From Phyllobates terribilis (Eukaryota), in assembly GCF_046119375.1 (NCBI RefSeq), contig NW_027362769.1, positions 359,228,001 to 359,292,000 on the forward strand: DNA of 64,000 nt, read 5' to 3'. The number at the start of each line of letters is the position of its first letter. Position 1 is the stretch's first letter. Positions 15,925 through 64,000 of the stretch are shown here, piece by piece. The notes below the pieces were generated by a model, which was given only the letters and a program-made list of their open reading frames with translations, searched no databases and was not told the DNA's origin. The position numbers were made by a program, and so were the translations under genes.

Positions 15925-16505
<581 letters not shown>

Positions 16506-18319: not shown

Positions 18320-18898
<579 letters not shown>

Positions 18899-19995: not shown

Positions 19996-20011
19996 GGCTC
20001 TTAGAAGAGCC
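19996..20011 (-). terminator. Histone 3' stem-loop (H2A)
   Basis: Minus strand reads CCAAA-GGCTCTTCTAAGAGCC-ACCAC. Confidence 0.95.
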
Positions 20012-20045: not shown

Positions 20046-21151
<1,106 letters not shown>

Positions 21152-21185
21152 NNNNNTCCGTCTGCTGCTCCGCTATCACCCCAAA

Positions 21186-21201
21186 GGCTCTTCTAAGAGC
21201 C
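21186..21201 (+). terminator. Histone 3' stem-loop (H2B)
   Basis: CCAAA-GGCTCTTCTAAGAGCC-ACCAC. Confidence 0.95.
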
Positions 21202-21207
21202 ACCACC

Positions 21208-22335
21208 CCGTCTACATCGGAGCTGTGGCTGCTCCTGTGTCCTCTGCCGTCTACATCGGAGCTGTGGCTGCTCCTGTGTCCTCTGCCGTCTACATCGGAG
21301 CTGTGGCTGCTCCTGTGTCCTCTGCCGTCTACATCGGAGCGGTGGCTGCTCCTGTGTCCTCTCCCGTCTACATCGGAGCGGTGGCTGCTCCTGTGTCCTC
21401 TCCCGTCTACATCAGAGCTGTGGCTGCTCCTGTGTCCTCTCCCGTCTACATCAGGGCTGTGGCTGCTCCTGTGTCCTCTCCCGTCTCCATCAGAGCTGTG
21501 GCTGCTCCTGTGTCCTCTCCCGTCTCCATCAGAGCTGTGGCTGCTCCTGTGTCCTCTCCCGTCTCCATCAGGGCTGTGGCTGCTCCTGTGTCCTCTCCCG
21601 TCTACATCAGAGCTGTGGCTGCTCCTGTGTCCTCTCCCGTCTACATCAGAGCTGTGGCTGCTCCTGTGTCCTCTCCCGTCTACATCAGAGCTGTGGCTGC
21701 TCCTGTGTCCTCTCCCGTCTACATCAGAGCGGTGGCTGCTCCTGTGTCCTCTCCCGTCTACATCAGAGCGGTGGCTGCTCCTGTGTCCTCTGCCGTCTAC
21801 ATCAGAGCTGTGGCTGCTCCTGTGTCCTCTGCCGTCTCCATCAGAGCTGTGGCTGCTCCTGTGTCCTCTGCCGTCTCCATCAGAGCTGTGGCTGCTCCTG
21901 TGTCCTCTCCCGTCTACATCAGAGCTGTGGCTGCTCCTGTGTCCTCTCCCGTCTACATCAGGGCTGTGGCTGCTCCTGTGTCCTCTCCCGTCTACATCAG
22001 GGCTGTGGCTGCTCCTGTGTCCTCTGCCGTCTACATCAGAGCTGTGGCTGCTCCTGTGTCCTCTCCCGTCTACATCAGAGCTGTGGCTGCTCCTGTGTCC
22101 TCTCCCGTCTACATCAGAGCGGTGGCTGCTCCTGTGTCCTCTGCCGTCTACATCAGAGCTGTGGCTGCTCCTGTGTCCTCTCCCGTCTCCATCAGAGCTG
22201 TGGCTGCTCCTGTGTTCTCTCCCGTCTACATCAGAGCTGTGGCTGCTCCTGTGTCCTCTCCCGTCTACATCAGAGCTGTGGCTGCTCCTGTGTCCTCTCC
22301 CGTCTACATCAGAGCTGTGGCTGCTCCTGTGTTCT
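21208..22335 (+). repeat. 39-bp minisatellite, about 29 copies, whose unit contains the H2B histone downstream element
   Basis: Unit CCGTCTACATCAGAGCTGTGGCTGCTCCTGTGTCCTCTC. It begins 6 nt after the stem-loop. The paralogous H2B has a single copy at 50385-50423. Confidence 0.95.
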
Positions 22336-22569
22336 GTCTATTCACAGGGTAAATGGCAGGTGGCGCTAGTAGAGCTGATTAACTCTTTCCTAGACTGATA
22401 GTGAAACCTATGAATGAGTCCTTCACAGCTCTGATCCTTTCAGTAATCTTATGAGCGAGTTGTCCTGTGTTCAGTGGCTTTTTACTCCACCCCTTGCTCC
22501 CCAGATCTGATATTCCGGGGTCTCCTTCATCCTGTATAACATGATTCGGTTAGTTCATGTTTCTCCGAA

Positions 22570-22880
22570 TAACATGAGACATTTGTGTAGAATTTATCTA
22601 TAATTCCGGACACTTCTTTTCACAGCGGAAGAAATTACATCATTACATTTAGAAGTTGTGGAAACTACAATGAGCGGGAAATTCATAATCCGCAGAGGAA
22701 GAGGAGGAGCTAATGTTACCAATGGGTGAATTCCCGCTCAGTGCTTGATGGATTTTCTGTTCTTTGTCATCATATAACACGTGGTCCTATGTCGGGCCGA
22801 TATCGGGAACACCTGCATGTGTGCAGCGATTATTCCTCGTTTACATCACATACAGGAGTCTGTAGAGTTTCGGGATTAGG
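22570..22880 (+). promoter_or_regulatory. Repeated non-coding E2F module, copy 3 (orphan)
   Basis: GGAAACTACAATGAGCGGGAAATTCA...GGAGCTAATGTT...GAATTCCCGCTCAG...TTTTCTGTTCTTTGTC aligns with the reverse complement of 17200-17545. Confidence 0.6.
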
Positions 22881-23149
22881 GCAGCAGATCTTTTTCTTCA
22901 GTACATTGCATCACAATCACTGATCGGGGATTTATCCTACAAGAGACATTTCTAGAAAGATCAATTCTACTTTCCCATGCAGATCTCATTATGTCTCCCC
23001 GATCATCTCCTCAGCAGTTTTCCAGTAATCCATTTACAGATCAATTCTACAGCTAAAGGCAGGAGGTTTGTGACAGGACACGTACGATTGTGGATTGCAG
23101 ATTGCTGAGAGTTCATTGCTCAAAACATTACACTCTGCTGTCAGGAGCC

Positions 23150-23653
23150 TATAGGTCAGGCATGCAGTATAGGTCAGGCATGCAGTATAGGTCAGGCATG
23201 CAGTATAGGTCAGGCATGCAGTATAGGTCGGGCATGCAGTATAGGTCAGGCATGCAGTATAGGTCGGGCATGCAGTATAGGTCGGGCATGCAGTATAGGT
23301 CAGGCATGCAGTATAGGTCAGGCATGCAGTATAGGTCAGGCATGCAGTATAGGTCGGGCATGCAGTATAGGTCGGGCATGCAGTATAGGTCGGGCATGCA
23401 GTATAGGTCAGGCATGCAGTATAGGTCAGGCATGCAGTATAGGTCGGGCATGCAGTATAGGTCGGGCATGCAGTATAGGTCGGGCATGCAGTATAGGTCG
23501 GGCATGCAGTATAGGTCGGGCATGCAGTATAGGTCGGGCATGCAGTATAGGTCAGGCATGCAGTATAGGTCAGGCATGCAGTATAGGTCAGGCATGCAGT
23601 ATAGGTCAGGCATGCAGTATAGGTCAGGCATGCAGTATAGGTCAGGCATGCAG
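23150..23653 (+). repeat. 18-bp minisatellite, 28 copies
   Basis: Unit TATAGGTC(A/G)GGCATGCAG. Confidence 0.97.
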
Positions 23654-23744
23654 TTAGATCCTCAGTCATCACATCCTCCTCAGGAGATTCTTTCCTGCTC
23701 AGGTACTGATCGCTCTTCTGCTCTTTCTCTTGTCCTCTCCCTCT

Positions 23745-23960
23745 TTATCCACTGACACTGAACATGGGCCCCGTCTCCTCCCAACCGAGAGAAGCTCCGC
23801 ACTCCAGTTGTGCTTCCCTGCCCGGATAATGTCTATCGTACAGAAAGCGGATTGTACGATGTGGAGACGATCTGGAGCTGCTGAGACCCCAGAAGGGTAA
23901 CACAGGCGATGGTCTCCGCTGACTGCCACCTCCCTGACCTGTAATATAAGTACACCCCAC
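23745..23960 (-). pseudogene. Decayed orphan copy of the H1 promoter/upstream region
   Basis: The reverse complement matches 63060-63190 and 63445-63535, including GGGCAGGGAAGCACAA, the GC box and TCAGTGTCAG. The CCAAT box is lost and no H1 CDS follows. Confidence 0.75.
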
Positions 23961-24061
23961 TATTGTGCAAAAGGTGAACTACTGAGAGAAGACACAAAAT
24001 GAAGCGTCTACACATAGAGCACAGCTGTATATAGTGCACAGACTGCACAACAATTATATAC

Positions 24062-24958
24062 AGCAGTGTGTACAGTATATAGAGCAGTGTGTACAGTATA
24101 TAGAGCTGCCTGTACAGTATATAGAGCAGTGTGTACAGTATATAGAGCTGCCTGTACAGTATATAGAGCAGTGTGTATAGTATATAGAGCAGTGTGTACA
24201 GTATATAGAGCAGTGTGTACAGTATATAGAGCTGCCTGTACAGTATATAGAGCAGTGTGTGCAGTATATAGAGCAGAGTGTACAGTATATAGAGCAGTGT
24301 GTACAGTATATAGAGCTGCCTGTACAGTATATAGAGCAGTGTGTGCAGTATATAGAGCAGAGTGTACAGTATATAGAGCTGCCTGTACAGTATATAGAGC
24401 AGTGTGTATAATATATAGAGCCGCCTGTACAGTATATAGAGCAGTGTGTACAGTATATAGAGCAGCCTGTACATTATATAGAGCAGTGTGTACAGTATAT
24501 AGAGCAGTGTGTACAGTATATAGAGCAGTGTGTGCAGTATATAGAGCAGCCTGTACAGTATATAGAGCAGTGTGTACAGTATATAGAGCAGCCTGTACAG
24601 TATATAGAGCAGCGTGTGCAGTATATAGAGCAGTGTGTACAGTATATAGAGCAGCCTGTACATTATATAGAGCAGTGTGTACAGTATATAGAGCAGCGTG
24701 TACAGTATATAGAGCAGTGTGTACAGTATATAGAGCAGCGTGTACAGTATATAGAGCAGTGTGTACAGTATATAGAGCAGCATGTACAGTATATAGAGCA
24801 GCCTGTACAGTATATAGAGCAGTGTGTACAGTATATAGAGCAGTGTGTATAGTATATAGAGCAGCCTGTACAGTATATAGAGCAATGTGTATAATATATA
24901 GTGCCGCCTGTACAGTATATAGAGTAGCCTGTACAGTATATAGAGTAGCCTGTATAGT
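24062..24958 (+). repeat. 21-bp minisatellite (about 43 copies)
   Basis: Unit GTGTACAGTATATAGAGCAGT. It continues at 26990-27380 after an insertion and has an inverted paralogue at 62520-62845. Confidence 0.95.
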
Positions 24959-26989
24959 CAGGGGTGGATTAAGAGTAGCGCAGCCCCCCCCACACACACA
25001 CCTGATGTATCACATGTCACATGATCCCCTGTGATAGTTCACATGAAATTAATTGGGCACAATATTAATTATAATAATTTTTTTAGGCTGTTTGCCCACT
25101 ATGAGTTTTTTATGCGTTTCCGCCGCGGCAATTCCACTGCAGAAACACTTAAAAAACGCTTGGTAGAAGGCCTTCCATGTTCGCCAATGATAATCCGCAT
25201 GTGCACTGCACATGCTGCGGAAATTTCCGCTGCGGATTATCATTGCGGAAAAATCCGCAGCATTACCAATTATTTTGCGGAAGCGCGGCGTTTTCACCGC
25301 CATTGACTTGCAATGGAACGTATGGAATCCGCATCACTGCATTTGTACATGCAGAATCCATGCGTTTCAATGTGCAGATGGTAACCAGGTTTGGAGAAGA
25401 GGAGTCTCTCCGCACCCGGGTACCATAGAACCTGTAAAAAAAGAATAAAATAAAAAATAAATATTATACTTACCTTATGACGGCCCCCGGTGTCTTTATC
25501 CTATGCGTCCTGGCTTGCCGGCAGCTCGCGATGGTCTGAAAATGACCTGCCGTGACGTCATTTAGTCATGTGACGGGTCACACGACCGCTGACGTCGGCA
25601 GGCCATCAGAAGGTAAGTATATATTTTTTATTTTTTACCATTCTTTTACGTTCACACTATATAAATCCATGCTGGTTGCATGGATTTATATAGTGTAACC
25701 AAGTTGTCAAGCACTTTCCAAGTGATGCTAAAATCGCTTGGAAAGCGCTTGTCAACCCGCATGCAGAAATGCATGTGAAGAACGCTTCACTTCCGCTTGT
25801 CCCTGGCAGGAAAAACGCATGTACAATCCGCATGTTCAATCCGCACGCGTTTTTTCTGCCAGGGAGATACAGAAACGCTCAAAATATGAAGCACACGTAG
25901 CCATCTATACACAGCGCGAGGCCGCACGGTGCCATCTATACACAGCGGGAGGCCACAAGGTGCCATCTATACACAGCAGGAGGCCGCACGTAGCTATCTA
26001 TACACAGCAGGAGGCCGCACGGTGCCATCTATACACAGCAGGAGGCAGAACGGTGCCATCTATACACAGCGGGAGGCCGCACGTAGCCATCTATACACAG
26101 CGGGAGGCCACACGGTGCCATCTATACACAGCAGGAGGCCGCACGTAGCTATCTATACACAGCAGGAGGCCGCACGGTGCCATCTATACACAGCAGGAGG
26201 CAGAACGGTGCCATCTATACACAGCGGGAGGCCGCACGTAGCCATCTATACACAGCGGGAGGCCGCACATAGCCATCTATACACAGGAGGAGGCCGCACA
26301 TAGCCATCTATACACAGCGGGAGGCTGCACGTAGCCATCTATACACAGCGGGAGGCCGCACATAGCCATCTATACACAGCAGGAGGCCACACATAGCCAT
26401 CTATACACAGCAGGAGGCCGCACGGTGCCATTTATACTCAGCAGGAGTCCGCACGCAGTCACGCACACACAAACATATACAGACATATACATACATACAC
26501 GCATAAACACATTTGAAACACAAAAATACATATAAACAGACATCACTCAATGACATCTCTCTGAACACACACACACACACACACTCAATCACACACACAC
26601 ACACACACACTCACACACACTCACCATCCCCCGGCTCGGCTCCAGTCCTCCTGCTCCTCTCCGATGCAGCAGTGCAGGCCGGGAGCGCACTGCGTGACGT
26701 CACAGCTAGGAGACACGGCCGCGCACAGGGCCGTGTCTCCTAGCTGTGACGTGGCCGGACCAGCACAGGGAAGTTAACTGCTGCAGTGTTGGCGCGGCCG
26801 AATAAGAAGTAGCGGCCGTGCGCCGCTGCTGGGGAAGCGGTCCGGGGGCCCCCCCGCCACTGTCTGCCGTTATGTGCCGCGGCGCCGCACATATAATGAG
26901 GGCAATCTAGCCATAGACACCCCGGAGCCCCCCTGAGGAGCGGGGCCCCGGGCGGTAGCCCAGATTGCCCTCATTATAATCTGCCTATG
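24959..26989. mobile_element. Non-autonomous hAT-like element inserted in the 21-bp array
   Basis: Ends CAGGGGTGGATTA / TAATCTGCCTATG (imperfect TIR). 8-bp flanks TGTATAGT and TGTAAAGT match at 7/8. Confidence 0.65.
25895..26435 (+). repeat. 31-bp minisatellite (about 17 copies)
   Basis: Unit GCCATCTATACACAGCGGGAGGCCGCACGTA, located inside the hAT-like element. Confidence 0.9.
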
Positions 26990-27380
26990 TGTAAAGTATA
27001 TAGAGCAGCCTGTACAGTATATAGAGCAGTGTGTACAGTATATAGAGCAGTTTGCACAGTATATAGAGCAGTTTGTACAGTATATAGAGCAGCCTGTACA
27101 GTATGTACAGCAGTGTGTACAGTATATAGAGCAGTCTGTCCAGTATATAGAGCAGTGTGTACAGTATATAGAGCTGTCTGTACAGTATATAGAGCAGTGT
27201 GTACAGTATATAGAGCAGTTTGCACAGTATATATAGCTGCCTGTACAGTATATAGAGCAGTGTGTGCAGTATATAGAGCAGTGTGCACAGCATAAAGAGC
27301 TGCCTTTACAGTATATAGAGTAGTATGTACAGTATATAGAGCTGCCTGTACAGTATATAGAGCAGTCTGTACAGTATATA
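26990..27380 (+). repeat. Continuation of the 21-bp minisatellite
   Basis: Same unit as 24062-24958. Confidence 0.9.
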
Positions 27381-36663: not shown

Positions 36664-36934
36664 CTGATAATACAAAGCAGGCCTGGTAATAACCCTATTA
36701 TTACCCAGGGTGCCACTCACCACCAGGGCCGCTGGAAGAGCCGGGTAAATCACCTGGAAATGGTGCTATGATGAATGCACCATTTTCAGGGGTGGCTGCA
36801 GGCAGCGATTTTCAGCGTGGGGGCCAAGAACGCTTGGGCCTTACCATGCTGAAAATCCCAGCCCCCAGCTGCCTTGTTTTATCTGGCTGGTGATCAACAT
36901 ATGTCGGGAGCTGGGCAATGGGCATGATTATCAA

Positions 36935-39900
36935 ATAATATATACCTGACAGGAGCCCATAGATTCTGTTGGCTCCAATAATATATACCTTACAGGAGCC
37001 CATAGATTCTGCTGCCTCGAATAATATATACCTGACAGGAGCCCATAGATTCTGCTGCCTCCATTAATATATACCTGACAGGAGCCCATAGATTCTGCTG
37101 GCTCCAATAATATATACCTGACAGGAGCCCATAGATTCTGCTGCCTCCATTAATATATACCTGACAGGAGCCCATAGATTCTGCTGGCTCCAATAATATA
37201 TACCTGACAGGAGCCCATAGATTCTGCTGGCTCCAATAATATATACCTGACAGGAGCCCATACATTCTGCTGCCTCGAATAATATATACCTGACAGGAGC
37301 CCAAACATTCTGCTTCCTCGAATAATATATACCTGACAGGAGCCCATAGATTCTGCTACCTCCAATAATGTATACCTGACAGGAGCCCATGCATTCTCCT
37401 GCCTCCAATAATATATACCTGAAAGGAGCCCATAGATTCTGCTGCCTCCAATAATATATACCTGACAGGAGCCCATAGATTCTGCTGCCTCTAATAATAT
37501 ATACCTGACAGGAGCCCATACATTCTGCTGCCTCCAATAATATATACCTGACAGGAGCCCATAGGTTCTGCTCCCTCCAATAATATCGTTAACAATCCCG
37601 AAAAGTAGGAAGCATGGGAAGCATTTAAGGAAACCAGGATGAATGAACACAGAACTTAAACACATGCTAAAAAAGAAAGGAAGAAATGTTTATCATATGG
37701 AAAGAGGGAGGCATATCTATAGAAGATTATAATGCAGTCTGCAGATCCTGTAGGGCACGTATCAGGTTAGCTAAAGGTGACAATGAATTAAGGCTTGCAA
37801 GAGATGTCAAAAGCAATAAAAAAGGATTTTGGGGGTATGTCAAAAGTAAAAGAAAAGTCAAAGATGCTATAGGATTTTTACAGGATGAAAATGGTGAAAT
37901 GGTAAGAAAGGATGTTGAGAAGGCCGAACTTTTTAATTCCTATTTTGCATCTCTTTTCTCTCAGAAAGAAAATGTAACATTAACTGATCTTCACTGTCCT
38001 ATTAAAGGAAAAGAAGAATCCAAGTTATCTGTAAACAGAGAGATTGTGAAGGAATATTTAGCTAACATAAATGAGTTCAAGTCTCCAGGTCCAGACGAAT
38101 TACACCCCAGAGTACTGAAGGAGATCGTAGAAGAAATTTTAGATCCACTCTCCATAATCTTTGAAAATTCTTGGAGAACAGGAGAAGTCCCAGAAGACTG
38201 GAGAAGAGCAAATGTTGTTCCTATCTTCAAAAAAGGGAAGAAGGTGGACCCAGGGAACTATAGGCCGGTAAGTCTGACTTCTATACCAGGAAAGATCTTT
38301 GACAAATTATTAAACAATATGTATGTAAGTACCTGGATAAGAATGAAGTGATTAACCAGAGTCAGCATGGGTTTGTAACTAACAAGTCATGTCAGACTAA
38401 CATAATTTCCTTCTATGACAGAATCACTGACTGGGTGGATCAGGGAAATGCTGTAAATATAATATATCTTGACTTCAGCAAAGCATTTGACAAAGTATCT
38501 CACACCATCCTTATTCAAAAAATTACCAAGTATGGAATGGACAAGGCAACTATTAGGTGGATTCATAACTGGCTTAGTGATCGGACTCAAAGAGTGGTCG
38601 TAAATGGCTTCACATCCAGTTGGATGAATGTCTCAAGTGGGGTACCACAGGGTTCTGTCCTGGGACCTGTATTTATCAACATCTTTATCAATGATTTAGA
38701 TGAAGGAATTGAGGGTAAACTGATTAAATTTGCTGATGACACAAAGCTAGGAGGGATAGCTATTACTTGAGAAGAGAGAGAGAGGATTCAAAAAGACCTA
38801 AATAAACTGGAGCATTGGGCAGTAACTAACAGTATGGTTTTTAACAGGGAAAAATGCAAAGTACTATATCTGGGCAATAAAAAAGAAAAAAGCATATACA
38901 AAATGGGAGGAATAGAGCTAAGCAACAGTACATGTGAAAAAGACTTGGGTATACTAATAGATCATAGACTGAACATGAGTCAACAGTGTGATGCAGCAGC
39001 AAAAAAGTCAAATACAATTCTGGGATGTATTAACAGAAGCATACAGTCTAGATCACGTGAAGTCGTTATCGGACTTTACTTTTCTTTGGTCAGACCTCAT
39101 CTGGAATACTGCGTCCAGTTTTGGGCACCACATTTTAAAAAAGACATCGACAAACTGGAGCAAGTTCAGAGAAGAACGACCAGAATGATGACCGGTCTGC
39201 AAACCATGTCCTATGAGGAATGGTTACAGGATTTGGGAATGTTTAGCTTGCAAAAAAGAAGACTGAGAGGAGACTTAATAGCTGTCTACAAATATCTCAA
39301 GGGCTGTCACATTGTAGAAGGATCATCTTTATTCTCATTTGCACAAGGAAAGACTAGAAGCAATGGGATGAAACTGATTGGGAGGAGACACAGATTAGAT
39401 ATTCGAAAAAACTTTTTGACAGTGAGGGTGATCAATGAGTGGAACAGGCTGCCACGAGAGGTGGTGAGTTCCCCTTCAATGGACGTCTTCAAACAGAGGC
39501 TGGACAGATATCTGTCTGAGATGATTTAGCGAATCCTGCTTTGAGCAGGGGGTTGGACCAGATGACCCAGGAGGTCCCCTCCAACTCTACCATTCTATGA
39601 ATATATACCTGACAGGAGCCCATAGATTCTTCTGGCTCCAATAATATATACCTGACAAGAGCCCATAGATTCTGCTGGCTCCAATAATAAATACCTGACA
39701 GAAGCCCAAACATTCTGCAGGCTCCAATAATATATACCTGACAGGAGCCCATACATTCTCCTGCCTACAATAATATATACCTGACAGGAGCCCATAGATT
39801 CTCCTGCCTCCAATAATATATACTTGGTAGAAGCCCATACATTCTGCTGGCTCTAATAATATATACCTGACAGGAGCCCATAGATTCTGCTGCCTCCAAT

Positions 39901-42900
39901 AATATATACCTGATAGGAGCCCATACATTCTCCTGCCTCCAATAATATATACCTGACAGGAGCCCATAGATTCTGCTGCCTCCAATAATATATACCTGAC
40001 AGGAGACCACACATTCTCCTGCCTCCAATAATATATACCTGACAGGAGCCCATACATTCTGCTGCCTCCAATAATATATACCTGACAGGAGCCCATACAT
40101 TCTCCTGCCTCCAATAATATATACCTGACAGGAGCCCATAGATTCTGCTGCCTCCAATAATATATACCTGACAGGAGACCACACATTCTCCTGCCTCCAA
40201 TAATATATACCTGACAGGAGCCCATAGATTCTGCTGCTTCCAATAATATATACCTGGCAGGAGCCCATACATTCCCCTGCCTTCAATAATATATACCTGA
40301 AAGGAGTCCATAGATTCTCCTGCCTCCAATAATATATACCTGACAAGAGCCCATACATTCTGCTGCCTCCAATAATATATACCTGGTAGGAGCCCATACA
40401 TTCTCCTACCTCCAATAATATATACCTGACAGGAGCCCATAGATTCTGCTGCCTCCAAAATATATACCTGACAGGAGTCCATACATTCTCCTGCCTCCAA
40501 TAATATATACCTGACAGGAGCCCATACATTCTGCTGCCTCCAATAATATATACCTGACAGGAGTCCATACATTCTCCTGCCTCCAATAATATATACCTGA
40601 CAGGAGCCCATAGATTCTGCTGCCTCCAATAATATATACCTGACAGGAGCCCATACATTCTCCTGCCTCCAATAAAATATACCTGACAGGAGCCCATACA
40701 TTCTGCTGCCTCCAATAATATATACCTGACAGGAGTCCATACATTCCCCTGCCTCCAATAATATATACCTGACAGGAGCCCAAAGATTCTCCAGCCTCCA
40801 ATAATATATACCTGAAAGGAGTCCATACATTCTCCTGCCTCCAATAATATATACCTGACAGGAGCCCAAAGATTCTCCAGCCTCCAATAATATATACCTG
40901 ACAGGAGCCCATACATTCTCCTGCCTCCAATAATATATACCTAATATATACCTGACAGGAGCCCATAGATTCTGCTGCCTCCAATAATATATACCTGACA
41001 GGAGCCCATATACTCTGCTACCTCAAAAAATAAATACCTGACAGGAGCCTATAGATTCTGCTGCCTCCAATAATATATACCTGACAGGAGCCCAAACATT
41101 CTGCTGTCTCCAATAATATATACCTGACAGGAGCCCAAAGATTCTGCTGCCTCCAATAATATATACCTGACAGGAGCCCATACGTTCTCCTGCCTCCAAT
41201 ATTATATACCTGGTAGGAGCCAATACATTCTCCTGCCTCCAATAATATATACCTGACAATATACCGACAGGAGCCCATAGATTCTCCCGCCTCCAATAAT
41301 ATATACCTGGTAGGAGCCCATACATCTGCTGGCTACAATCATATAAACCTGATAGGAGCCCATAGATTCTTCTGCCTCCAATAATATATACCTTGTAGGA
41401 GCCCATGCATTCTCCTGCCTCCAATAATATATACCTGACAGGAGCCCATAGATTCTGCTGCATCCAATAATATATACCTGACAGGAGCCCATAGATTCTG
41501 CTGGCTCCAATAATATATACCTGACAGGAGCCCATAGATTCTGCTGCCTCCAATAATATATACCTGACAGGAGCCCATAGATTCTGCTGGCTCCAATAAT
41601 ATATACCTGACAGGAGCCCATAGATTCTGCTGCCTCCAATAATATATACCTGACAGGAGCCCATAGATTCTGCTGGCTCCAATAATATATACCTGACAGA
41701 AGCCCATAGATTCTGCTGCCTCCAATAAAATATACCTGACAGGAGCCCATAGATTCTCCTGCCTCCAATAATATATACCTGACAGGAGCCCATAGAATCT
41801 GCTGCCTCCTATAATATACACCTGGTAGGAGCCCATATATTCTGCTGGCTCCAATAATATATACCTGACAGGAGCCCATCGATTCTGCTGCCTCCAATAA
41901 TATATACCTGACAGGAGCCCATACACTCTGCTGCCTCCAATAATATATACCTGACAGGAGCCCATAAATTCTTCTGCCTCCAATAATTTATACCTGACAG
42001 GAGTCCATACATTCTCTTGCCTCCAATAATATATACCAGACAGGAGCCCATACATTCTCCTGCCTCCAATAATATATACCTGACAGGAGTCCATACATTC
42101 TGCTGCCTCCAATAATATATACCTGACGGGAGCCCATACATTCTGCTGCCTCCAATAATATATACCTGACAGGAGCCCATAGATTCTGCTGCCTCCAATA
42201 ATATATACCCGACAGGACCCATACATTCTGCTGCCTCCAATAATATATACCTGACAGGAGCCCATACATTCTCCTGCCTCCAATAATATATACCTGACAG
42301 GAGCCCATAGATTCTGCTGCCTCCAATAATATATATCTGACAGGATCCCATACATTCTACTGCCTCCAATAATATATACCTGACAAGTCTAATACATTCT
42401 TCTGCCTCCAATAATATATACGTGACAGGATCCCATACATTCTGCTGCCTCCAATAATATATACCTGACAGGAGCCCATAGATTCTGCTGCCTCCAATAA
42501 TATATACCCGACAGGACCCATACATTCTGCTGCCTCCAATAATATATACCTGACAGGAGCCCATAGAGTCTGCTGCCTCCAATAATATATACCTGACAGG
42601 ATCCCATACATTCTCTTGCCTCCAATAATATATACCTGACAGGAGCCCATACATTCTGCTGCCTCCAATAATATATACCTGACAGGATCCCATACATTCT
42701 CTTGCCTCCAATAATATATACCTGACAGTAGCCCATACATTCTGTTCCCTCCAATAATATATACCTGACAGGACCCATACATTTTGCTGCCTCCAATAAT
42801 ATATACCTGACAGGATCCCATACATTCTGCTGCCTCCAATAATATATACCTGACAGGAGCCCATAGATTCTGCTGCCTCCAATAATATATACCTGACAGG

Positions 42901-44550
42901 AGCCCATAGATTCTGCTGCCTCCAATAATATATATCTGACAGGATCCCATACATTCTACTGCCTCCAATAATATATACCTGACAGGAGCCCATAGAGTCT
43001 GCTGCCTCCAATAATATATACCTGACAGGAGCCCATAGATTCTGCTGCCTCCAATAATATATACCTGACAGGAGCCCATAGATTCTGCTGCCTCCAATAA
43101 TATATACCTGACAGGAGCCCATACATTCTGCTGCCTCCAATAATATATACCTGACAGAAGCCCATAGATTCTATTGCCTTCAATAATATATACCTGACAG
43201 GAGCCCATACATTCTCCTGCCTCCAATAATATATACCTGACAGGAGCCCATAGATTCTGCTGCCTCCAATAATATATACCTGACAGGAGCCCATAGATTC
43301 TGCTGCCTCCAATAATATATACTTGATAGGAGCCCATAGATTCTGCTGGCTCCAATAATATATACCTGACAGGAGCCCATAGATTCTGCTGCCTCCAATA
43401 ATATATACCTGACAGGAGCCCATACATTCTGCTGCCTCCAATAATATATACCTGACAGGAGCCCATAGATTCTGCTGCCTCCAATAATATATACCTGACA
43501 GGAGCCCATACATTCTGCTGCCTCCAATAATATATACCTGACAGAAGCCCATAGATTCTGCTGCCTCCAATAATATATACTTGATAGGAGCCCATAGATT
43601 CTGCTGGCTCCAATAATATATACCTGACAGGAGCCCATAGATTCTGCTGCCTCCAATAATATATACCTGACAGGAGCCCATACATTCTGCTGCCTCCAAT
43701 AATATATACCTGACAGGAGCCCATAGATTCTGCTGCCTCCAATAATATATACCTGACAGGAGCCCATACATTCTGCTGCCTCCAATAATATATACCTGAC
43801 AGGAGCCCATAGATTCTGCTGCCTCCAATAATATATACCTGACAGGAGCCCATACATTCTGCTGCCTCCAATAATATATACCTGACAGAAGCCCATAGAT
43901 TCTACTGCCTTCAATAATATATACCTGACAGGAGCCCATACATTCCCCTGCCTCCAATAATATATACCTGACAGGAGCCCATACATTCTGCTGCCTCCAA
44001 TAATATATACCTGACAGGAGCCCATACATTCTACTGCCTCCAATAATATATACCTGACAGGACCCATACATTTTGCTGCCTCCAATAATATTTACCTGAC
44101 AGAAGCCCATAGATTCGACTGCCATCAATAATATATACCTGACAGGAGCCCATACATTCCCCTGCCTCCAATAATATATACCTGACAGGAGCCCATAGAT
44201 TCTGCTGCCTCCAATAATATATACCTGACAGGAGCCCATAGATTCTGCTGCCTCCAATAATATATACTTGATAGGAGCCCATAGATTCTGCTGGCTCCAA
44301 TAATATATACCTGACAGGAGCCCATAGATTCTGCTGCCTCCAATAATGTATAGCTGACAGAAGCCCATAGATTCTACTGCCTTCAATAATATATACCTGA
44401 CAGGAGCCCATACATTCCCCTGCCTCCAATAATATATACCTGACAGGAGCCCATAGATTCTGATGCCTCCAATAATATATACCTGGTAGGAGCCCATACA
44501 TTCTCCTGCCTCCAATAATATATTCCTGGTAGGAGCCCATAGATTCTGCT
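36935..44550. repeat. 43-bp satellite, about 130 copies, interrupted by CR1
   Basis: Unit AATAATATATACCTGACAGGAGCCCATAGATTCTGCTGCCTCC. Confidence 0.97.
37587..39600 (+). mobile_element. 5'-truncated CR1 LINE (RT domain, frameshifted)
   Basis: ORF pieces 37686-38351, 38348-38770 and 38834-39529 carry [37 protein letters not shown] and FADD. The 3' end is the CR1-type ATTCTATG. Confidence 0.93.
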
Positions 44551-45337
44551 GCCGCTGCCTCGGGCGACGCCGCGTCCGACCTCCACAGTGCGCACAGGAA
44601 GCAGTCCTAGGGAGATAACGTCATCGCCCTGAGACTGACCTCCTGCGCACGGACCGGCAGTGTTGCACTGCGCATAGGAGGCAGAGGGTCACTGCCGTAG
44701 CAGGCAGAGGAGGGAGATCGCTCTCCCTGCTTTGACGTTGCAGAGGGCCCATCACTAATCATATCGGCAGTGCTGCCGATATGATTAGCGAACCAGGGGG
44801 GCAGGGTGTGGGGCTTGGGGGCGTCGCTATCGGGACTCGGGGCCCACCCGGGGTTTTCCCGATCCTCCGGTGGGCCAGTCCACCCTGCCTACAGCCTCTC
44901 CCCACATCTACTCAATCATCCTCCTCCATAACCACTTTCTCTACCATTACGGAAGATCAACTTTCCTATTTACTTTCCAAATCACACCTCACCACCTGTG
45001 AACTTGACCCAATCTCGTCCCACCTCATCCCAAACCTTACCACTATCTTCATCCCAACCTTAGCCCACCTTTTCAACTTGTCATCAACAACTGGCGTCTT
45101 TCCCTCATACTTCAAACATGCCTCGATCACACCCAACCTCAAAAAGCCCTCCCTTGACCTATCCTCTCTGACTAGCTATCGACCCATATCACTTGTCCCC
45201 TATGCCTCAAAACTACTGGAACAACACGTTCATTCTGAACTGTCCTCCCACCTCTCCTCCTGCTCCCTCTTCGACCACCTACAATCTGGTTTCCAATCGC
45301 ACAATTTTACTGAAACTGCACTGACTAAGGTCACCAA

Positions 45338-45766: not shown

Positions 45767-48246
45767 CCAATGGCCTACTAACAGCCAATCCAAGCTACAC
45801 TACTCTGTCCTCCTCCTCCTGGACCTGTCATCTGCCTTTGACACAGTGGACCATTCCCTCTTACTCCAGACTCTCTCATCTCTCGGCATCACAGACTTGG
45901 CCCTATCCTGGATCTCCTCATACCTAACAGACCGGACATTCAGTGTCTCCCACTCACACGCCACTTCCTCATCTCACCCTTTATCTGTCGGTGTCCCTCA
46001 AGGTTCAGTTCTAGAACCCTTACTCTTCTCCATCTACACCTTAGGCCTGGGACAGCTCATAGAGTCTCACGGCTTTCAGTATCACCTCTATGCCGACGAC
46101 ACAGAAATCTACCTCTCTGAACCCGATATCTCCTCCATACTAACCAAAATCCCACAATGTCTGTCCGCTATTTCATCCTTATTCTCTGCTAGATTTCTAA
46201 AACTTAACATGGACAAAACAGAATTCATCATCTTTCCCCATCTCAACCCCCCCAACTGAACTATCTATCAATGTCAATGGCTGTCCACTCTCCCCAGTCC
46301 CTCAAGCTCACTGCCTTGGGGTAACCCTGGACTCTAATCTCTCCTTCAAACCACATATCCAAGTCAGTTACACTTCCTGCCGACTCCAACTTAAAAATAT
46401 CTCTCAGATCCGCACATTCCTCAACCATGAATCTGCGAACACACTAGTGCATGCCCTCATCTCCTGCCTCGACTACTGCAACCTCCTGCTCTGTGGCCTC
46501 CCTTCCAACACTCTCGCACCCCTCCAATCTATCCTAAGCTCTGCTCCCCGACTAATCTACCTGTCCCCCTGCTATTCCACAGGCTCTCCTCTCTGTCAAT
46601 CTCTTCACTGGCTCTCCATTGCTCAGAGACTCCAGTTCAAAACCCTAACCATGGCATACAAAGCCATCCACAGTCTGTCTCCTCCATATATCTCTGACCT
46701 AGTCTCCCGGTACATACCCGCACGCAACCTCCGATCCTCACAACATCTCCTTCTCTACTCCTCTCTTATCTCCTCCTGTCTCAATCGCATACAAGATTTC
46801 TCCTGTGCATCCACCCTACTCTGGAACTGTCTACCCCAACATATCAGACTCTCGCCTACCATGGAAACCTTCAAAAGGAACCTGAACCCACCTCTTCCGA
46901 CAAGCCTACAACCTGCAGTAACCCTCGCTCCACCATACCACTCCACTACCAGCCCTACCCTCAACTACTGTATCCTCGCCAATCCCTTGTAGATTGTGAG
47001 CCCTCGTGGGCAGGGTCCTTGCTCCTCCTGTACCAGTCGCTGTCACGTTTTGTTCAAGATTATTGTAATTGTTTTTGCTATTTATTCCCCTTTTTTCACA
47101 TGTAATGCGCCATGGAATAAATGGCGCTATAATAAATAATAATATTAATTTTAAAATAAATAAAAAAATAAATACATACTTACCGCTCCTCATTCTCCGC
47201 TGCTTCCGTCTCTGCAGCACGTCTCTCTCATCACCTCAGCCGCTGCCAGCTCCACTCTCTGACACAGCGTGGTGCGTCATCATGCCGCTGCGTCAGACTA
47301 GGGAGGAGGAATGATCGGAGAGGGAGTGTCACATGACGCAGAGAAAAATAGTTTTACAACACAGGACCCAGCCTGCCTCTTCATCCTTCATATATGCAGA
47401 CATGCCTGCACACACACAGTACGCAGACATGCACACACACACACAGTACGCAGACATGCACACACACACACTCACAGTACGCAGACATGCACATACACAC
47501 ACAGTACGCAGTTATGCAAGCACACGGTAAGCATACATACACACACGTGCACATGGTACACAGATATGTACACATATAATAAGCAGACACGTGCATACAG
47601 GCATACGTACATATTTGAACACATTCTTTAAAACACATAAAACAGACATAAATATGTATACACAGTCATACACACACACACGTTAAAATTATTTTTATCA
47701 TGGGGTTTGGGGAAGCCGGCAACAAACCTCACTCACCTGCCTTGGTCTGTGTCCTGTCCAGCAACTCCTCAGGCATGAGTCAGTGCAGTGCTGCTAGCGT
47801 GTCACAGATATGACCCTGGACCATCAGGGGTCCCACTCGCCATCGGGCCCGGACCGCTTCCACGGCATCTGTGTAGGACTACTGGCGCTGCTTGATTGCC
47901 GTCACTTCGCCTGACATGGCCATGCACAGTGCACTGTGCGGCTGTGTCGGGTAGTAATGCTGTGGTGGGGCGATACACAAGCACAATTATAGGCGCAGTG
48001 TCGCCCCTGCCTTGTCATTACTAGCAGACACAGCCGCACAGTGCACTGCGCATAGCCTTGTCAGGTGAAGTGCCGGTAATCAAGCAGCGCCAGATTAAAT
48101 GAGTCCTCTGCAGCAAATCATACAGTGGAGCAAGGATCGTGTACACAGATAGATCTATATACCGTCTGGTACACAGGTGTCAGCAGACCCTAGTGTGGAC
48201 CATCGCCTGCTATCTGCGGTGCGGGCTCTTATGAGGAGGATGTGGT

Positions 48247-48262
48247 GGCTCTTAGAAGAGCC
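48247..48262 (-). terminator. Histone 3' stem-loop of pseudo-H2A
   Basis: GGCTCTTCTAAGAGCC on the minus strand. Confidence 0.9.
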
Positions 48263-48296
48263 TTTAGTTGTTCTGACAGATGTGGAGGAGCGGCGC

Positions 48297-50327
<2,031 letters not shown>

Positions 50328-50361: not shown

Positions 50362-50404
50362 GGCTCTTCTGAGAGCCACCACCGCGTCTACATCAGAGCT
50401 GTGG
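50362..50404 (+). terminator. Stem-loop and single HDE of pseudo-H2B
   Basis: GGCTCTTCTGAGAGCC at 50362-50377, then CATCAGAGCTGTGG at 50391-50404. Confidence 0.9.
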
Positions 50405-51084
50405 CTGCTTCTGTGTTCTCTCCCGTCTCCCCGAGTTGTCTGGCCACATAGCCCGGGTCTCTGTCTAATGACAGGGTAAATAGCAGGTGGCCTTTGTAGA
50501 AGTGAAGGCTAAGGGCTAACGAAGAAGATGGCGAAAAAACTGGGGCTGCTTTTGGGTTCTCCTTCACAGCTCAGCACTTTCACCAATGCCCTTGTGATTT
50601 CAGATGGAAGTTCAGTGACTTATTTAAGCCCTTGCTCCTCAGATCTGACTCCTTTTCGTCTCATTCCTATTTTAGGAATTGATTCGGTTTAGTTTCTCTA
50701 AATAATGAAATTACTTCACTGTTTTATGAAAGGTGATTACATGAGATTGTGGTCGGTGGAGTTTATTAGTGATGAGCAGCATGCTCACCACTATTCGTTA
50801 CGAGCTCGAGATGCTCGTTGCTGGCGAGTATTTTTTGAATGTTCGGGAGCTTGAATCGCGCCCCGCATGTTTGGCGCATAATATACAGCCAATTACCATG
50901 CAGGGGTTGCGTGACAGTCAATGTCATGTCATAGCCAAGTTGGTTGTGGCATTACAGTGACTGGCTGGTCGCACAGCGTCATCAGGTCTATATCAGAGGT
51001 CTATATCAGACCTGGCGCCGCCATGCTTGTCACAGTCACTCCGGAATCAGACAGTGTAGGGAGAGCTGCTGCTGAGCTAGGGAG

Positions 51085-62400: not shown

Positions 62401-62519
62401 GGGCCGTCTGCTGAATGCCCCTCATTACCAGCTCCCCTTTGACAACTCCTCCTACCAGGGGAGAAAGAAATCCGTAAATGGGCGTGTATTGGTGTGTGGC
62501 CAAAATTTGCCTGCTCTTT

Positions 62520-62845
62520 ATACTTTAAATGCTGCTCTATATACTGTACACACTGCTCTATATACTGTAAACGCTGCTCTATATACTGTACACACTGCAC
62601 TATACTGCTCTATATACTGTACATACTGCTCTATATACTGTCTGTAAACACTGAACTATATACTGTACACACTGCTCTATATACTGTACACACAGAACTA
62701 TATACTGTACAGACTTCTCTATATACTGTACATACTGCTCTATATACTGTATACACTGCTCTATATACTGTACACACTGCTCTATATACTGTACAGACTG
62801 TTCTATATACTGTACACACTGAACTATATACTGTACACGTTGCTC
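62520..62845 (-). repeat. 21-bp minisatellite, inverted paralogue of 24062-24958
   Basis: Unit ACTGCTCTATATACTGTACAC. Confidence 0.92.
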
Positions 62846-63444
62846 TATTATCTGGGACATCTATAAGGCTGCTGATCTGGGCTGTACACATGTTGTGTTA
62901 GGGATGAGTCGCATTGTGAAGCTGGCGCCTTATCAGAGCTCTTCACTCCATTAACTGCCGCAGCGTCACAGCTTCACACAGGGTCAGACACGATATTACA
63001 CAGGTGATTGCAATCAGCCCCCTATGTGGATACGTGTTCACCCCCCAATACTCTGCACATTCGGGGTGTACTTATATTACAGGTCAGGGAGGTGGCAGTC
63101 AGCGGAGGCCATCGCCTGTGTTACCCTTCTGGGCTCTCAGCAGCTCCAGGTCGTCCCCACATCGTACAATCCGCTTCCTGTACGATGGATATTGTAGTAA
63201 AGATCCCTGTGATGGTGACAAGAGCCGGGAATAGGAGGAACGAGCTCCCGCAGCAGTTTTATCTCCCCGGATACACAGTGATGCGCAGATCGGGAGGACG
63301 GCGGCGATGATCCCGGGACCTCCTCTCGGCTCTTTCCCGGCATCTCTGCTGGTGACGGCTACAAACGGTCAGTGGAGATGATGGAGAAGAGGAAGCGACG
63401 GAGAAAGCGCGCTCTGCTGTCCGGTGTTAGACGGTAAAGGGCTT

Positions 63445-63665: not shown

Positions 63666-64000
63666 ATGGCCGAGACCGCACCAGCCGCCGCTCCCCCTCC
63701 CGCAGAACCGGCCGCCAAATCCAAGAAACAGCCGAAGAAATCCGCCGCCGGGGGCGCCAAGAAAAGCAAGAAACCCTCCGGTCCCAGCGTCGCCGATCTG
63801 ATCGTGAAAGCCGTGTCCGCCTCTAAGGAGCGCAGTGGGGTGTCTCTGGCCGCCCTGAAGAAGGCTCTGTCTGCCGGAGGATACGATGTAGAGAAGAACA
63901 ACAGCCGCCTGAAGCTGGCCGTCAAGGCTCTGGTCACCAAGGGCGCCCTCCTCCAGGTGCAGGGCAGCGGCGCCTCCGGGTCCTTCAAGCTAAACAAGAA
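63666..64000 (+). CDS. H1: Linker histone H1 (somatic type), truncated by the window end
   Basis: Not in the ORF track. Translates to [25 protein letters not shown]...[72 protein letters not shown], covering the winged-helix globular domain. Confidence 0.97.

What the first reader, a model, noticed from the sequence alone, without database searches (positions are those of the whole stretch)
21186..22335. The U7-snRNP binding site (HDE) of H2B is amplified into a 29-copy tandem array
Seen: the 39-bp array starts right after the H2B stem-loop, and most units carry CAGAGCTGTGG. The paralogue has this element once (50391-50404), between two CGTCT pentamers exactly 39 bp apart (50385 and 50424), which defines the unit and points to a slippage origin. 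Known: the 5' end of vertebrate U7 snRNA (GUUACAGCUCUUUU) pairs with the HDE consensus AAAGAGCUGU; here AGAGCTGT pairs perfectly and the following GG can wobble-pair. Inference: nascent or read-through H2B RNA would display up to about 29 U7 sites downstream of a single SLBP site. This could act as a U7/FLASH-Lsm11 sponge or histone-locus-body scaffold, alter processing efficiency, or give CPSF73 entry points for degrading the downstream product. The functional first unit is a weaker G variant (CGGAGCTGT). I know of no described HDE minisatellite.
Basis: partly seen in the sequence, partly recalled or inferred. Interest (0 to 1): 0.85.

Follow-up and report, generated by a model that had tools for sequence, protein, structure and literature searches.

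The report
Minisatellite grown from H2B processing signal
Right behind an apparently intact frog histone H2B gene, the short signal that docks the U7 RNA-cutting particle has been copied 29 times in a row, most likely as ordinary repeat growth rather than a working device.

Summary
A gap-free array of 29 units of 39 bp (21209-22339) starts 7 nt after the H2B 3' stem-loop. Each unit carries the gene's own histone downstream element (HDE). With mammalian U7, 24 units are predicted to pair without an internal mismatch and 5 have one internal mismatch.

The slippage origin fits. A second H2A-H2B pair in the window, which has decayed, has one unit between two CGTCT repeats 39 bp apart. Both of its repeat variants recur as unit starts in the array.

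No test supports the proposed function (U7 sponge, histone-locus-body scaffold, altered processing):
- 24% of the window is tandem repeat, with 11 minisatellites.
- Three of the six variable columns lie in the 8-nt HDE core.
- Units 2-29 have no stem-loop, and published work shows that even a 21-bp U7 duplex does not hold U7 snRNP without SLBP.
- The RNA evidence is inconclusive, and this species' U7 was not available.

My verdict is a near-neutral minisatellite whose first unit is the working HDE (about 0.6). A fail-safe role in processing or termination is not excluded (about 0.2).

The scan flagged the same thing at ten or more other places in this genome, behind H2B and H1. Two follow-ups of H1-derived satellites also judged them neutral. 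I found no published description.

The parts
20682..20704 (+). H2B promoter core: octamer ATTTGCAT (20682-20689) and TATAAATA (20697-20704)
   Evidence: Read directly from the sequence. Assigning these motifs to an H2B-type promoter rests on general knowledge, not on a test here.
20771..21151 (+). H2B coding region. 20872-21156 is masked as N and was not read.
   Evidence: The ATG and 33 N-terminal residues are visible. The distance from the ATG to the 3' UTR equals that of the paralogue (offset 29176 at both ends), so the length fits 126 codons plus a stop. Whether the masked part is intact cannot be checked.
21186..21201 (+). H2B 3' stem-loop (6-bp stem, loop TCTA). ACCAC at 21202-21206 holds the expected cleavage site.
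   Evidence: Rfam RF00032, 30.3 bits, below the gathering score of 34.
21219..21228 (+). HDE of unit 1 (GGAGCTGTGG), the presumed working U7 site. Its GAGC starts 18 nt after the stem.
   Evidence: It lies at the same position as the (A/G)GAGC cores of the other five histone genes. Predicted duplex with mouse U7 is -18.8 kcal/mol.
21209..22339 (+). Minisatellite of 29 units of 39 bp. Each unit holds the sequence just after the cleavage site, the HDE and a 19-nt pyrimidine-rich spacer.
   Evidence: Unit junctions are present in independent DNA runs.
22340..23149 (+). Unique spacer between the H2B array and the next (18-bp) minisatellite. No AATAAA or ATTAAA on the + strand up to 24000.
   Evidence: Runs guessed to be RNA hold one contig from 22303 to beyond 22900 at depth about 24, with strand unknown.
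20046..20438 (-). H2A gene, divergent partner of H2B, intact 130-aa reading frame. Its stem-loop is at 19996-20011.
   Evidence: The identical protein is encoded in four large NCBI assemblies.
49947..50327 (+). Paralogous H2B copy, which looks decayed (50047-50181 masked).
   Evidence: Six replacements in the last 47 residues compared with solved Xenopus and human H2B, and R to L in the N-terminal tail. Its partner H2A is split by about 920 bp of inserted sequence.
50362..50428 (+). Paralogue 3' signal: stem-loop 50362-50377, a single 39-bp unit 50385-50423 (HDE 50395-50404), and a second CGTCT at 50424-50428.
   Evidence: The unit differs from the array consensus at 2 of 39 positions.

Best explanation
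This is a near-neutral minisatellite that grew out of the H2B 3' flank. The starting state resembled the paralogue: one 39-bp segment, holding the sequence just after the cleavage site plus the HDE, bounded by two CGTCT direct repeats. Replication slippage or unequal exchange between those repeats duplicated the segment, and ordinary minisatellite turnover then took it to 29 copies. This happened in a histone-cluster spacer where a quarter of the DNA is tandem repeat. Unit 1 sits at the normal distance from the stem-loop and serves as the gene's HDE. Units 2-29 lie downstream of the cleavage site and are passengers. They would appear only in short-lived read-through RNA, where they could at most bind U7 weakly because no SLBP-bound stem-loop sits beside them. 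Shown here: the anatomy, the identity of the element by position and complementarity, the one-unit paralogue, and the repeat-rich setting. Inferred: the slippage route, neutrality, and the suggestion that S-phase transcription-replication conflict or polymerase pausing at histone 3' ends favours repeat birth there.
For: The array is in perfect register with no indels and 97% identity. The paralogue has one unit between CGTCT repeats 39 bp apart. Its two repeat versions, CGTCTAC and CGTCTCC, both occur as unit starts in the array (23 and 6 units). Units are more alike (97%) than the two gene copies are (92-96%), so growth or homogenisation is younger than the gene duplication. 24% of the window lies in 24 tandem arrays, 11 of them minisatellites with 7-115 copies. 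Three of the six variable columns lie in the 8-nt HDE core, and 5 of 29 units carry a T-to-G change that puts a mismatch in the middle of the duplex (-14.1 against -18.8 kcal/mol). This shows no sign of purifying selection on pairing. Frog minisatellites that grow out of part of an existing element through recombination are documented (PMC10794172). A strong U7 duplex without SLBP does not hold U7 snRNP (PMC5435866).
Against: The array's left edge lies within about 3 nt of the expected cleavage site. At about one minisatellite per 5.8 kb, a start within a given 10-nt stretch has a chance near 0.002. Scan notes (unchecked by me) report that H1 genes of the same genome also carry arrays of cleavage site plus HDE, so pure chance is a poor account of the position. 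The array sits on the apparently intact gene and the single unit on the decayed copy. Two of the three core variants (A to G opposite U) keep pairing as G-U wobbles. With one array and six variable columns, the selection test has almost no power.
Confidence: 0.6

Rival explanations
1. Fail-safe processing or termination device. Read-through RNA that escaped cleavage at the stem-loop displays further strong U7 sites. U7 snRNP bound there cuts or degrades the RNA through CPSF73 and helps stop polymerase before the next gene of a densely packed, highly repeated cluster.
For: Every unit is predicted to pair with mammalian U7 at -14.1 to -18.8 kcal/mol, more strongly than the working HDEs of H3, H4 and H2A in this window. 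Only 19 of 24,847 background 39-mers (0.08%) reach -18.8, and no other minisatellite here is stronger than -12.4. Mammalian U7 snRNP can cleave without SLBP at lower efficiency (PMC5435866). The 5'-3' exonuclease activity of CPSF73 is proposed to drive termination on histone genes (PMC7491329). There is no poly(A) signal for 1.7 kb downstream. The array is on the intact gene, not on the decayed copy. Scan notes report recurrence behind H1.
Against: Internal units have no stem-loop, and a 21-bp duplex alone does not hold U7 snRNP. The position about 13 nt upstream of each internal HDE, where the U7 ruler would place a cut, lies in CTCTCC and has no A (the ruler distance and the preference for A are from general knowledge). 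Core variation is not depleted. No strand-resolved RNA evidence exists.
Confidence: 0.2
2. U7 sponge or histone-locus-body scaffold. Nascent RNA from hundreds of such arrays concentrates or titrates U7 snRNP, FLASH and Lsm11 at the histone loci.
For: Predicted U7 complementarity of all units. DNA word depth of the flank is about 185-265 in runs of about 2 billion letters, which suggests hundreds of cluster copies (inference). Amphibian oocyte 'spheres' are histone locus bodies that contain U7 snRNP and attach at histone loci (PMC12046345).
Against: No evidence that the array RNA accumulates. U7 snRNP is not stably held by base pairing alone. The downstream cleavage product is normally degraded quickly. 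This species' U7 sequence is unknown.
Confidence: 0.08
3. Assembly artefact: the array, or its length, comes from misassembly of a highly repeated histone cluster.
For: The cluster is highly multicopy, which makes locus-specific assembly hard. Copy number cannot be confirmed from short contigs.
Against: DNA runs from two separate studies contain exact unit-to-unit junctions, including the G-variant junction of units 1-2, and the junction from the last unit into the flank. The array has an ordered internal pattern of variants.
Confidence: 0.03

Closest known systems
Histone downstream element (HDE) of vertebrate replication-dependent histone genes
   Same: Unit 1 has a purine-containing core complementary to the 5' end of U7, at the usual distance after the stem-loop and cleavage site, like the other five histone genes in the window.
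   Different: A normal histone gene has one HDE. Here it is followed by 28 further copies with no stem-loop of their own. I found no described case of this.
Frog minisatellites that expand from a piece of an existing element, such as the 52-bp 3' tail of SINE/tRNA-V (PMC10794172)
   Same: A short segment of a pre-existing functional or mobile sequence is amplified in tandem in a repeat-rich region. Those authors attribute it to recombination and illegitimate exchange.
   Different: The seed here is a cis-acting RNA-processing signal of a host gene, and the first copy is presumably still in use.
Satellite DNA next to amphibian histone clusters that is transcribed by read-through on lampbrush loops (newt satellites; PMC2114352 and the account of Gall's work in PMC12046345)
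   Same: Tandem repeats lie downstream of amphibian genes and can be transcribed by read-through in oocytes.
   Different: Those satellites are unrelated in sequence to the histone 3' signal. Read-through across this array has not been shown.
H1-derived 36-37-bp satellites and other H2B and H1 HDE arrays noted by this scan in the same genome
   Same: The same kind of object: tandem copies of the sequence just after the cleavage site plus the HDE.
   Different: The unit differs (39 bp, H2B-derived) and the array is modest (1.1 kb against up to 43 kb). This window also offers a one-unit paralogue for comparison. Those notes were not checked here.

Membership tests
Histone downstream element (U7 snRNP binding site) | Lies a short fixed distance downstream of the histone stem-loop and cleavage site | tested here: met
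   For unit 1 only: GAGC starts 18 nt after the stem, as in H2A (18), with H3 at 20 and H4 at 16-18. Units 2-29 have no stem-loop upstream, so for them the feature is not met.
Histone downstream element (U7 snRNP binding site) | Complementary to the 5' end of the organism's U7 snRNA | tested here: inconclusive
   Tested against mouse and human U7 (sequence from PMC7026596): a predicted 14-bp duplex of -18.8 kcal/mol in 20 units, -17.9 in 4 and -14.1 in 5. This species' own U7 was not available.
Histone downstream element (U7 snRNP binding site) | Required for, and directs, 3' cleavage of the pre-mRNA | not testable with these tools
   This needs processing assays or 3'-end mapping.
Histone 3' UTR stem-loop (Rfam RF00032) | Match at or above the family's curated gathering score | tested here: not met
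   30.3 bits against a gathering score of 34, E 4.5e-6. The 6-bp stem, 4-nt loop with U at loop positions 1 and 3, and ACC tail are all present. The shortfall comes from the loop (UCUA) and the flank. The neighbouring H2A scores the same (30.4 bits).
Minisatellite | Head-to-tail tandem array of a 10-100-bp unit | tested here: met
   39 bp x 28.9 copies, 97% identity, no indels.
Minisatellite | Copy number varies between loci or individuals | tested here: inconclusive
   The paralogue has one unit. DNA runs show other array-to-flank junctions and other unit variants elsewhere in the genome. Scan notes report 22, 62 and about 180 units at other H2B loci (unchecked). Variation between individuals was not measurable from contigs.
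RNA sponge or decoy for a small RNP | An RNA that carries many binding sites accumulates and is bound by the factor | tested here: inconclusive
   Runs guessed to be RNA hold short array contigs at low depth and a contig across the downstream spacer at depth about 24. Strand, RNA origin and continuity with H2B are unknown.

The most novel reading that the evidence does not exclude
HDE arrays behind H2B (and, by the scan's notes, H1) are not accidents. In this frog's highly amplified histone clusters they would be kept, or arise repeatedly, because tandem U7 sites in nascent read-through RNA raise the local concentration of U7 snRNP. That would give back-up cleavage and CPSF73-driven termination, and possibly anchor the oocyte histone locus bodies ('spheres') to the loci.
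Probability: 0.2. Interest if true: 0.75.

Novelty: new variant of a known kind. Interest (0 to 1): 0.4.

Why it matters
If the array is neutral, it is a clear example of a minisatellite seeded by a functional RNA-processing signal, with the pre-expansion state preserved 29 kb away. That makes it useful for studying how minisatellites are born, and it warns against reading function into repeated motifs. If the copies do matter, the genome provides a ready series of histone genes with 1, 22, 29, 62 and more U7 sites. That series would make three questions directly testable: how U7 snRNP is recruited without SLBP, how polymerase terminates on histone genes, and what tethers histone locus bodies to their loci in amphibian oocytes.

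Tried and rejected
- A degenerate second unit after the paralogue's single unit: the alignment score was reached by 450 of 2000 shuffles, so I dropped the idea.
- A stable RNA structure in the array: each unit has a small hairpin that pairs the HDE's GAGC with GCUC downstream, but the folds are not better than shuffles (z = -0.84 for three units; -1.59 for the stem-loop plus unit 1).
- A coding reading: the 558-aa ORF 20676-22352 exists only because 39 is a multiple of 3 and the unit has no stop codon in any forward frame. It is not in the H2B frame.
- This species' or a Xenopus U7 sequence: none was found in the held papers or the scan's notes, so mammalian U7 was used.
- Fetching other H2A-H2B pairs to compare H2B 3' flanks: the window's H2A protein is encoded in four large NCBI assemblies, but no DNA was served.
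Contigs that resemble human DNA are filtered out, so zero depth over the H2B 3' UTR proves nothing.
- My first search of solved structures used the wrong reading frame; I repeated it in frame.
- The read-laying output printed a short loose end next to the masked stretch. I did not use it and did not fill any N.

Full report
**What is there.** The window holds a histone cluster:
- H3 at 16095-16505 (+)
- H4 at 18587-18898 (+)
- H2A at 20046-20438 (-)
- H2B at 20771-21151 (+)

All four have 3' stem-loops. Most of the H2B coding region (20872-21156) is masked, and I did not read it. The H2B promoter motifs, start codon, 33 N-terminal residues and 3' UTR are visible. The distance from the ATG to the 3' UTR is identical to that of the paralogue, so the gene has the length of an intact H2B.

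The H2B stem-loop is at 21186-21201. ACCAC follows, and the array begins at 21207-21209. It has a 39-bp period, 28.9 copies, 97% identity and no indels. That gives 29 units in perfect register, ending at 22332-22339.

**Is the repeated element the HDE?** Downstream of all six stem-loops in the window there is an (A/G)GAGC core starting 16-20 nt after the stem. In H2B unit 1 it starts at 18 nt, as in H2A. Human and mouse U7 begin ..GUGUUACAGCUCUUUUAG (PMC7026596). The unit's AGAGCTGT is the exact complement of ACAGCUCU.

| Target | Predicted duplex with the mouse U7 5' end (kcal/mol) |
|---|---|
| 20 array units | -18.8 |
| 4 units (AGGGCTGT; one G-U wobble) | -17.9 |
| 5 units (GCGGT; internal mismatch) | -14.1 |
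| HDEs of H3, H4 and H2A in this window | -9.4 to -11.6 |

Only 0.08% of background 39-mers reach -18.8, and no other minisatellite in the window is stronger than -12.4. The G variant of unit 1 is not predicted to be weaker. So "the H2B HDE amplified" is a fair structural description. The caveat is that this frog's own U7 could not be obtained.

**Origin.** A second H2A-H2B pair lies at 48.2-50.4 kb and is 92-96% identical to the first. It is decayed:
- Its H2A is split by about 920 bp of inserted sequence and has Arg-to-Cys changes.
- Its H2B has six replacements in the last 47 residues compared with solved Xenopus and human H2B.

Behind its stem-loop there is exactly one unit (2 of 39 differences from the array consensus). 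The unit is bounded by CGTCTAC and CGTCTCC, 39 bp apart. Both versions occur as unit starts in the array (23 and 6 units). This is what unequal exchange or slippage between the two repeats would produce. Units are more alike than the two gene copies are, so growth or homogenisation came after the duplication. A collapse of an older array in the paralogue cannot be excluded.

**Setting.** 24% of the window is tandem repeat. There are 11 minisatellites with 7-115 copies, most of them in the histone-cluster spacers. Frog minisatellites that expand from a fragment of an existing element through recombination are documented (PMC10794172).

DNA runs from two studies hold exact unit junctions and the junction from the last unit into the flank. 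They also show other array ends and another H2B 3' end elsewhere in the genome. The flank's word depth is about 185-265 in runs of about 2 billion letters, which suggests hundreds of cluster copies (the copy number is my inference).

**Tests of function.**
- *Variation within the array.* Six unit columns vary, and three of them lie in the 8-nt core (Fisher p = 0.09, towards enrichment). Five units have a disruptive T-to-G change. This gives no sign of selection on pairing. Two core variants are wobble-compatible A-to-G changes, which is a weak hint the other way. With a single array the test has little power.
- *Missing stem-loop.* Units 2-29 have none. [quoted passage not shown] Mammalian U7 snRNP can still cleave without SLBP at lower efficiency (PMC5435866).
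- *Fate of the downstream RNA.* The downstream cleavage product is normally degraded 5'-3' by CPSF73, which may also drive termination (PMC7491329).
- *RNA evidence.* Runs guessed to be RNA hold a contig from the last unit across the spacer to beyond 22900 at depth about 24, plus short array contigs. Strand, true RNA origin and linkage to H2B are all unknown.
- *Structure.* The unit's small hairpin is not significant.

**What remains odd.** The array starts within about 3 nt of the expected cleavage site. At the local density of minisatellites, the chance of that is about 0.002 per gene. The scan's notes say that H1 genes of this genome carry similar arrays, and that other H2B loci carry 22, 62 and about 180 units (I did not check these). 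One H1 gene starts at 63667 in this window and runs off its end.

Shared descent within an amplified cluster explains the H2B recurrences. It does not explain the parallel between H2B and H1. A mutational bias at histone 3' ends, which are transcribed in S phase, is possible, and so is selection. I cannot separate the two.

**Verdict.**

| Reading | Confidence |
|---|---|
| Near-neutral minisatellite seeded by the H2B 3' signal, with unit 1 as the working HDE | 0.6 |
| Back-up processing or termination role | 0.2 |
| U7 sponge or histone-locus-body scaffold | 0.08 |
| Assembly artefact | 0.03 |

Amphibian oocyte histone locus bodies contain U7 snRNP and sit at histone loci (PMC12046345). That keeps the scaffold idea testable, but nothing here supports it. 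Searches of the held literature found no description of tandem HDE arrays. The scan itself has flagged the phenomenon many times in this genome, and two follow-ups of H1-derived satellites also judged them neutral.

Noticed in passing
window 48216-50327: The second H2A-H2B pair is decayed. Its H2A is interrupted by about 920 bp that itself contains 46-bp and 103-bp tandem repeats (48676-49057). Its H2B has CpG-type replacements at otherwise invariant residues, and one of the two CCAAT boxes upstream of H2B reads CCAAA.
   Followed up: partly
window 63667-64000 (+): A histone H1 gene starts at 63667 ([12 protein letters not shown]...) and runs off the window's end. According to a scan note its 3' end, just beyond the window, is also followed by a tandem HDE array.
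   Followed up: no
window 19996-20011, 21186-21201, 48247-48262, 50362-50377: The H2A and H2B stem-loops have loops UCUA or UCUG, where H3 and H4 have UUUC. They score about 30 bits, below the Rfam gathering score of 34, so a scan at the gathering threshold misses them.
   Followed up: partly
window 23150-27380, 36934-44553 and 62511-62848: The spacers are packed with minisatellites. There is an 18-mer x 28, and 21-mer arrays at 24055-24945 and 26990-27380 with an inverted relative at 62511-62848. A 43-mer x 115 (39600-44553) has a related block at 36934-37586. In total 24% of the window is tandem repeat.
   Followed up: partly
window 22303-22900 and beyond: Four small runs from one study, guessed to be RNA, hold a contig of about 800 nt that covers the whole unique spacer between the H2B array and the 18-bp array, at depth about 24. 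This could be read-through or spacer transcription, or it could be DNA from a cluster with hundreds of copies.
   Followed up: partly
window 20676-22352 (+): A 558-aa ORF runs through the array (repeating PVYIRAVAAPVSS). It is an artefact of a 39-bp unit with no stop codon in any forward frame.
   Followed up: yes
window 21202 (other genomic copies, from DNA run X10): At least one other H2B-type 3' end in the genome continues after the stem-loop with a different flank that has its own CAAGAGCTGC core and no 39-bp unit. Other arrays end on a different flank (TTGTTCACAGCCCGGG...).
   Followed up: no
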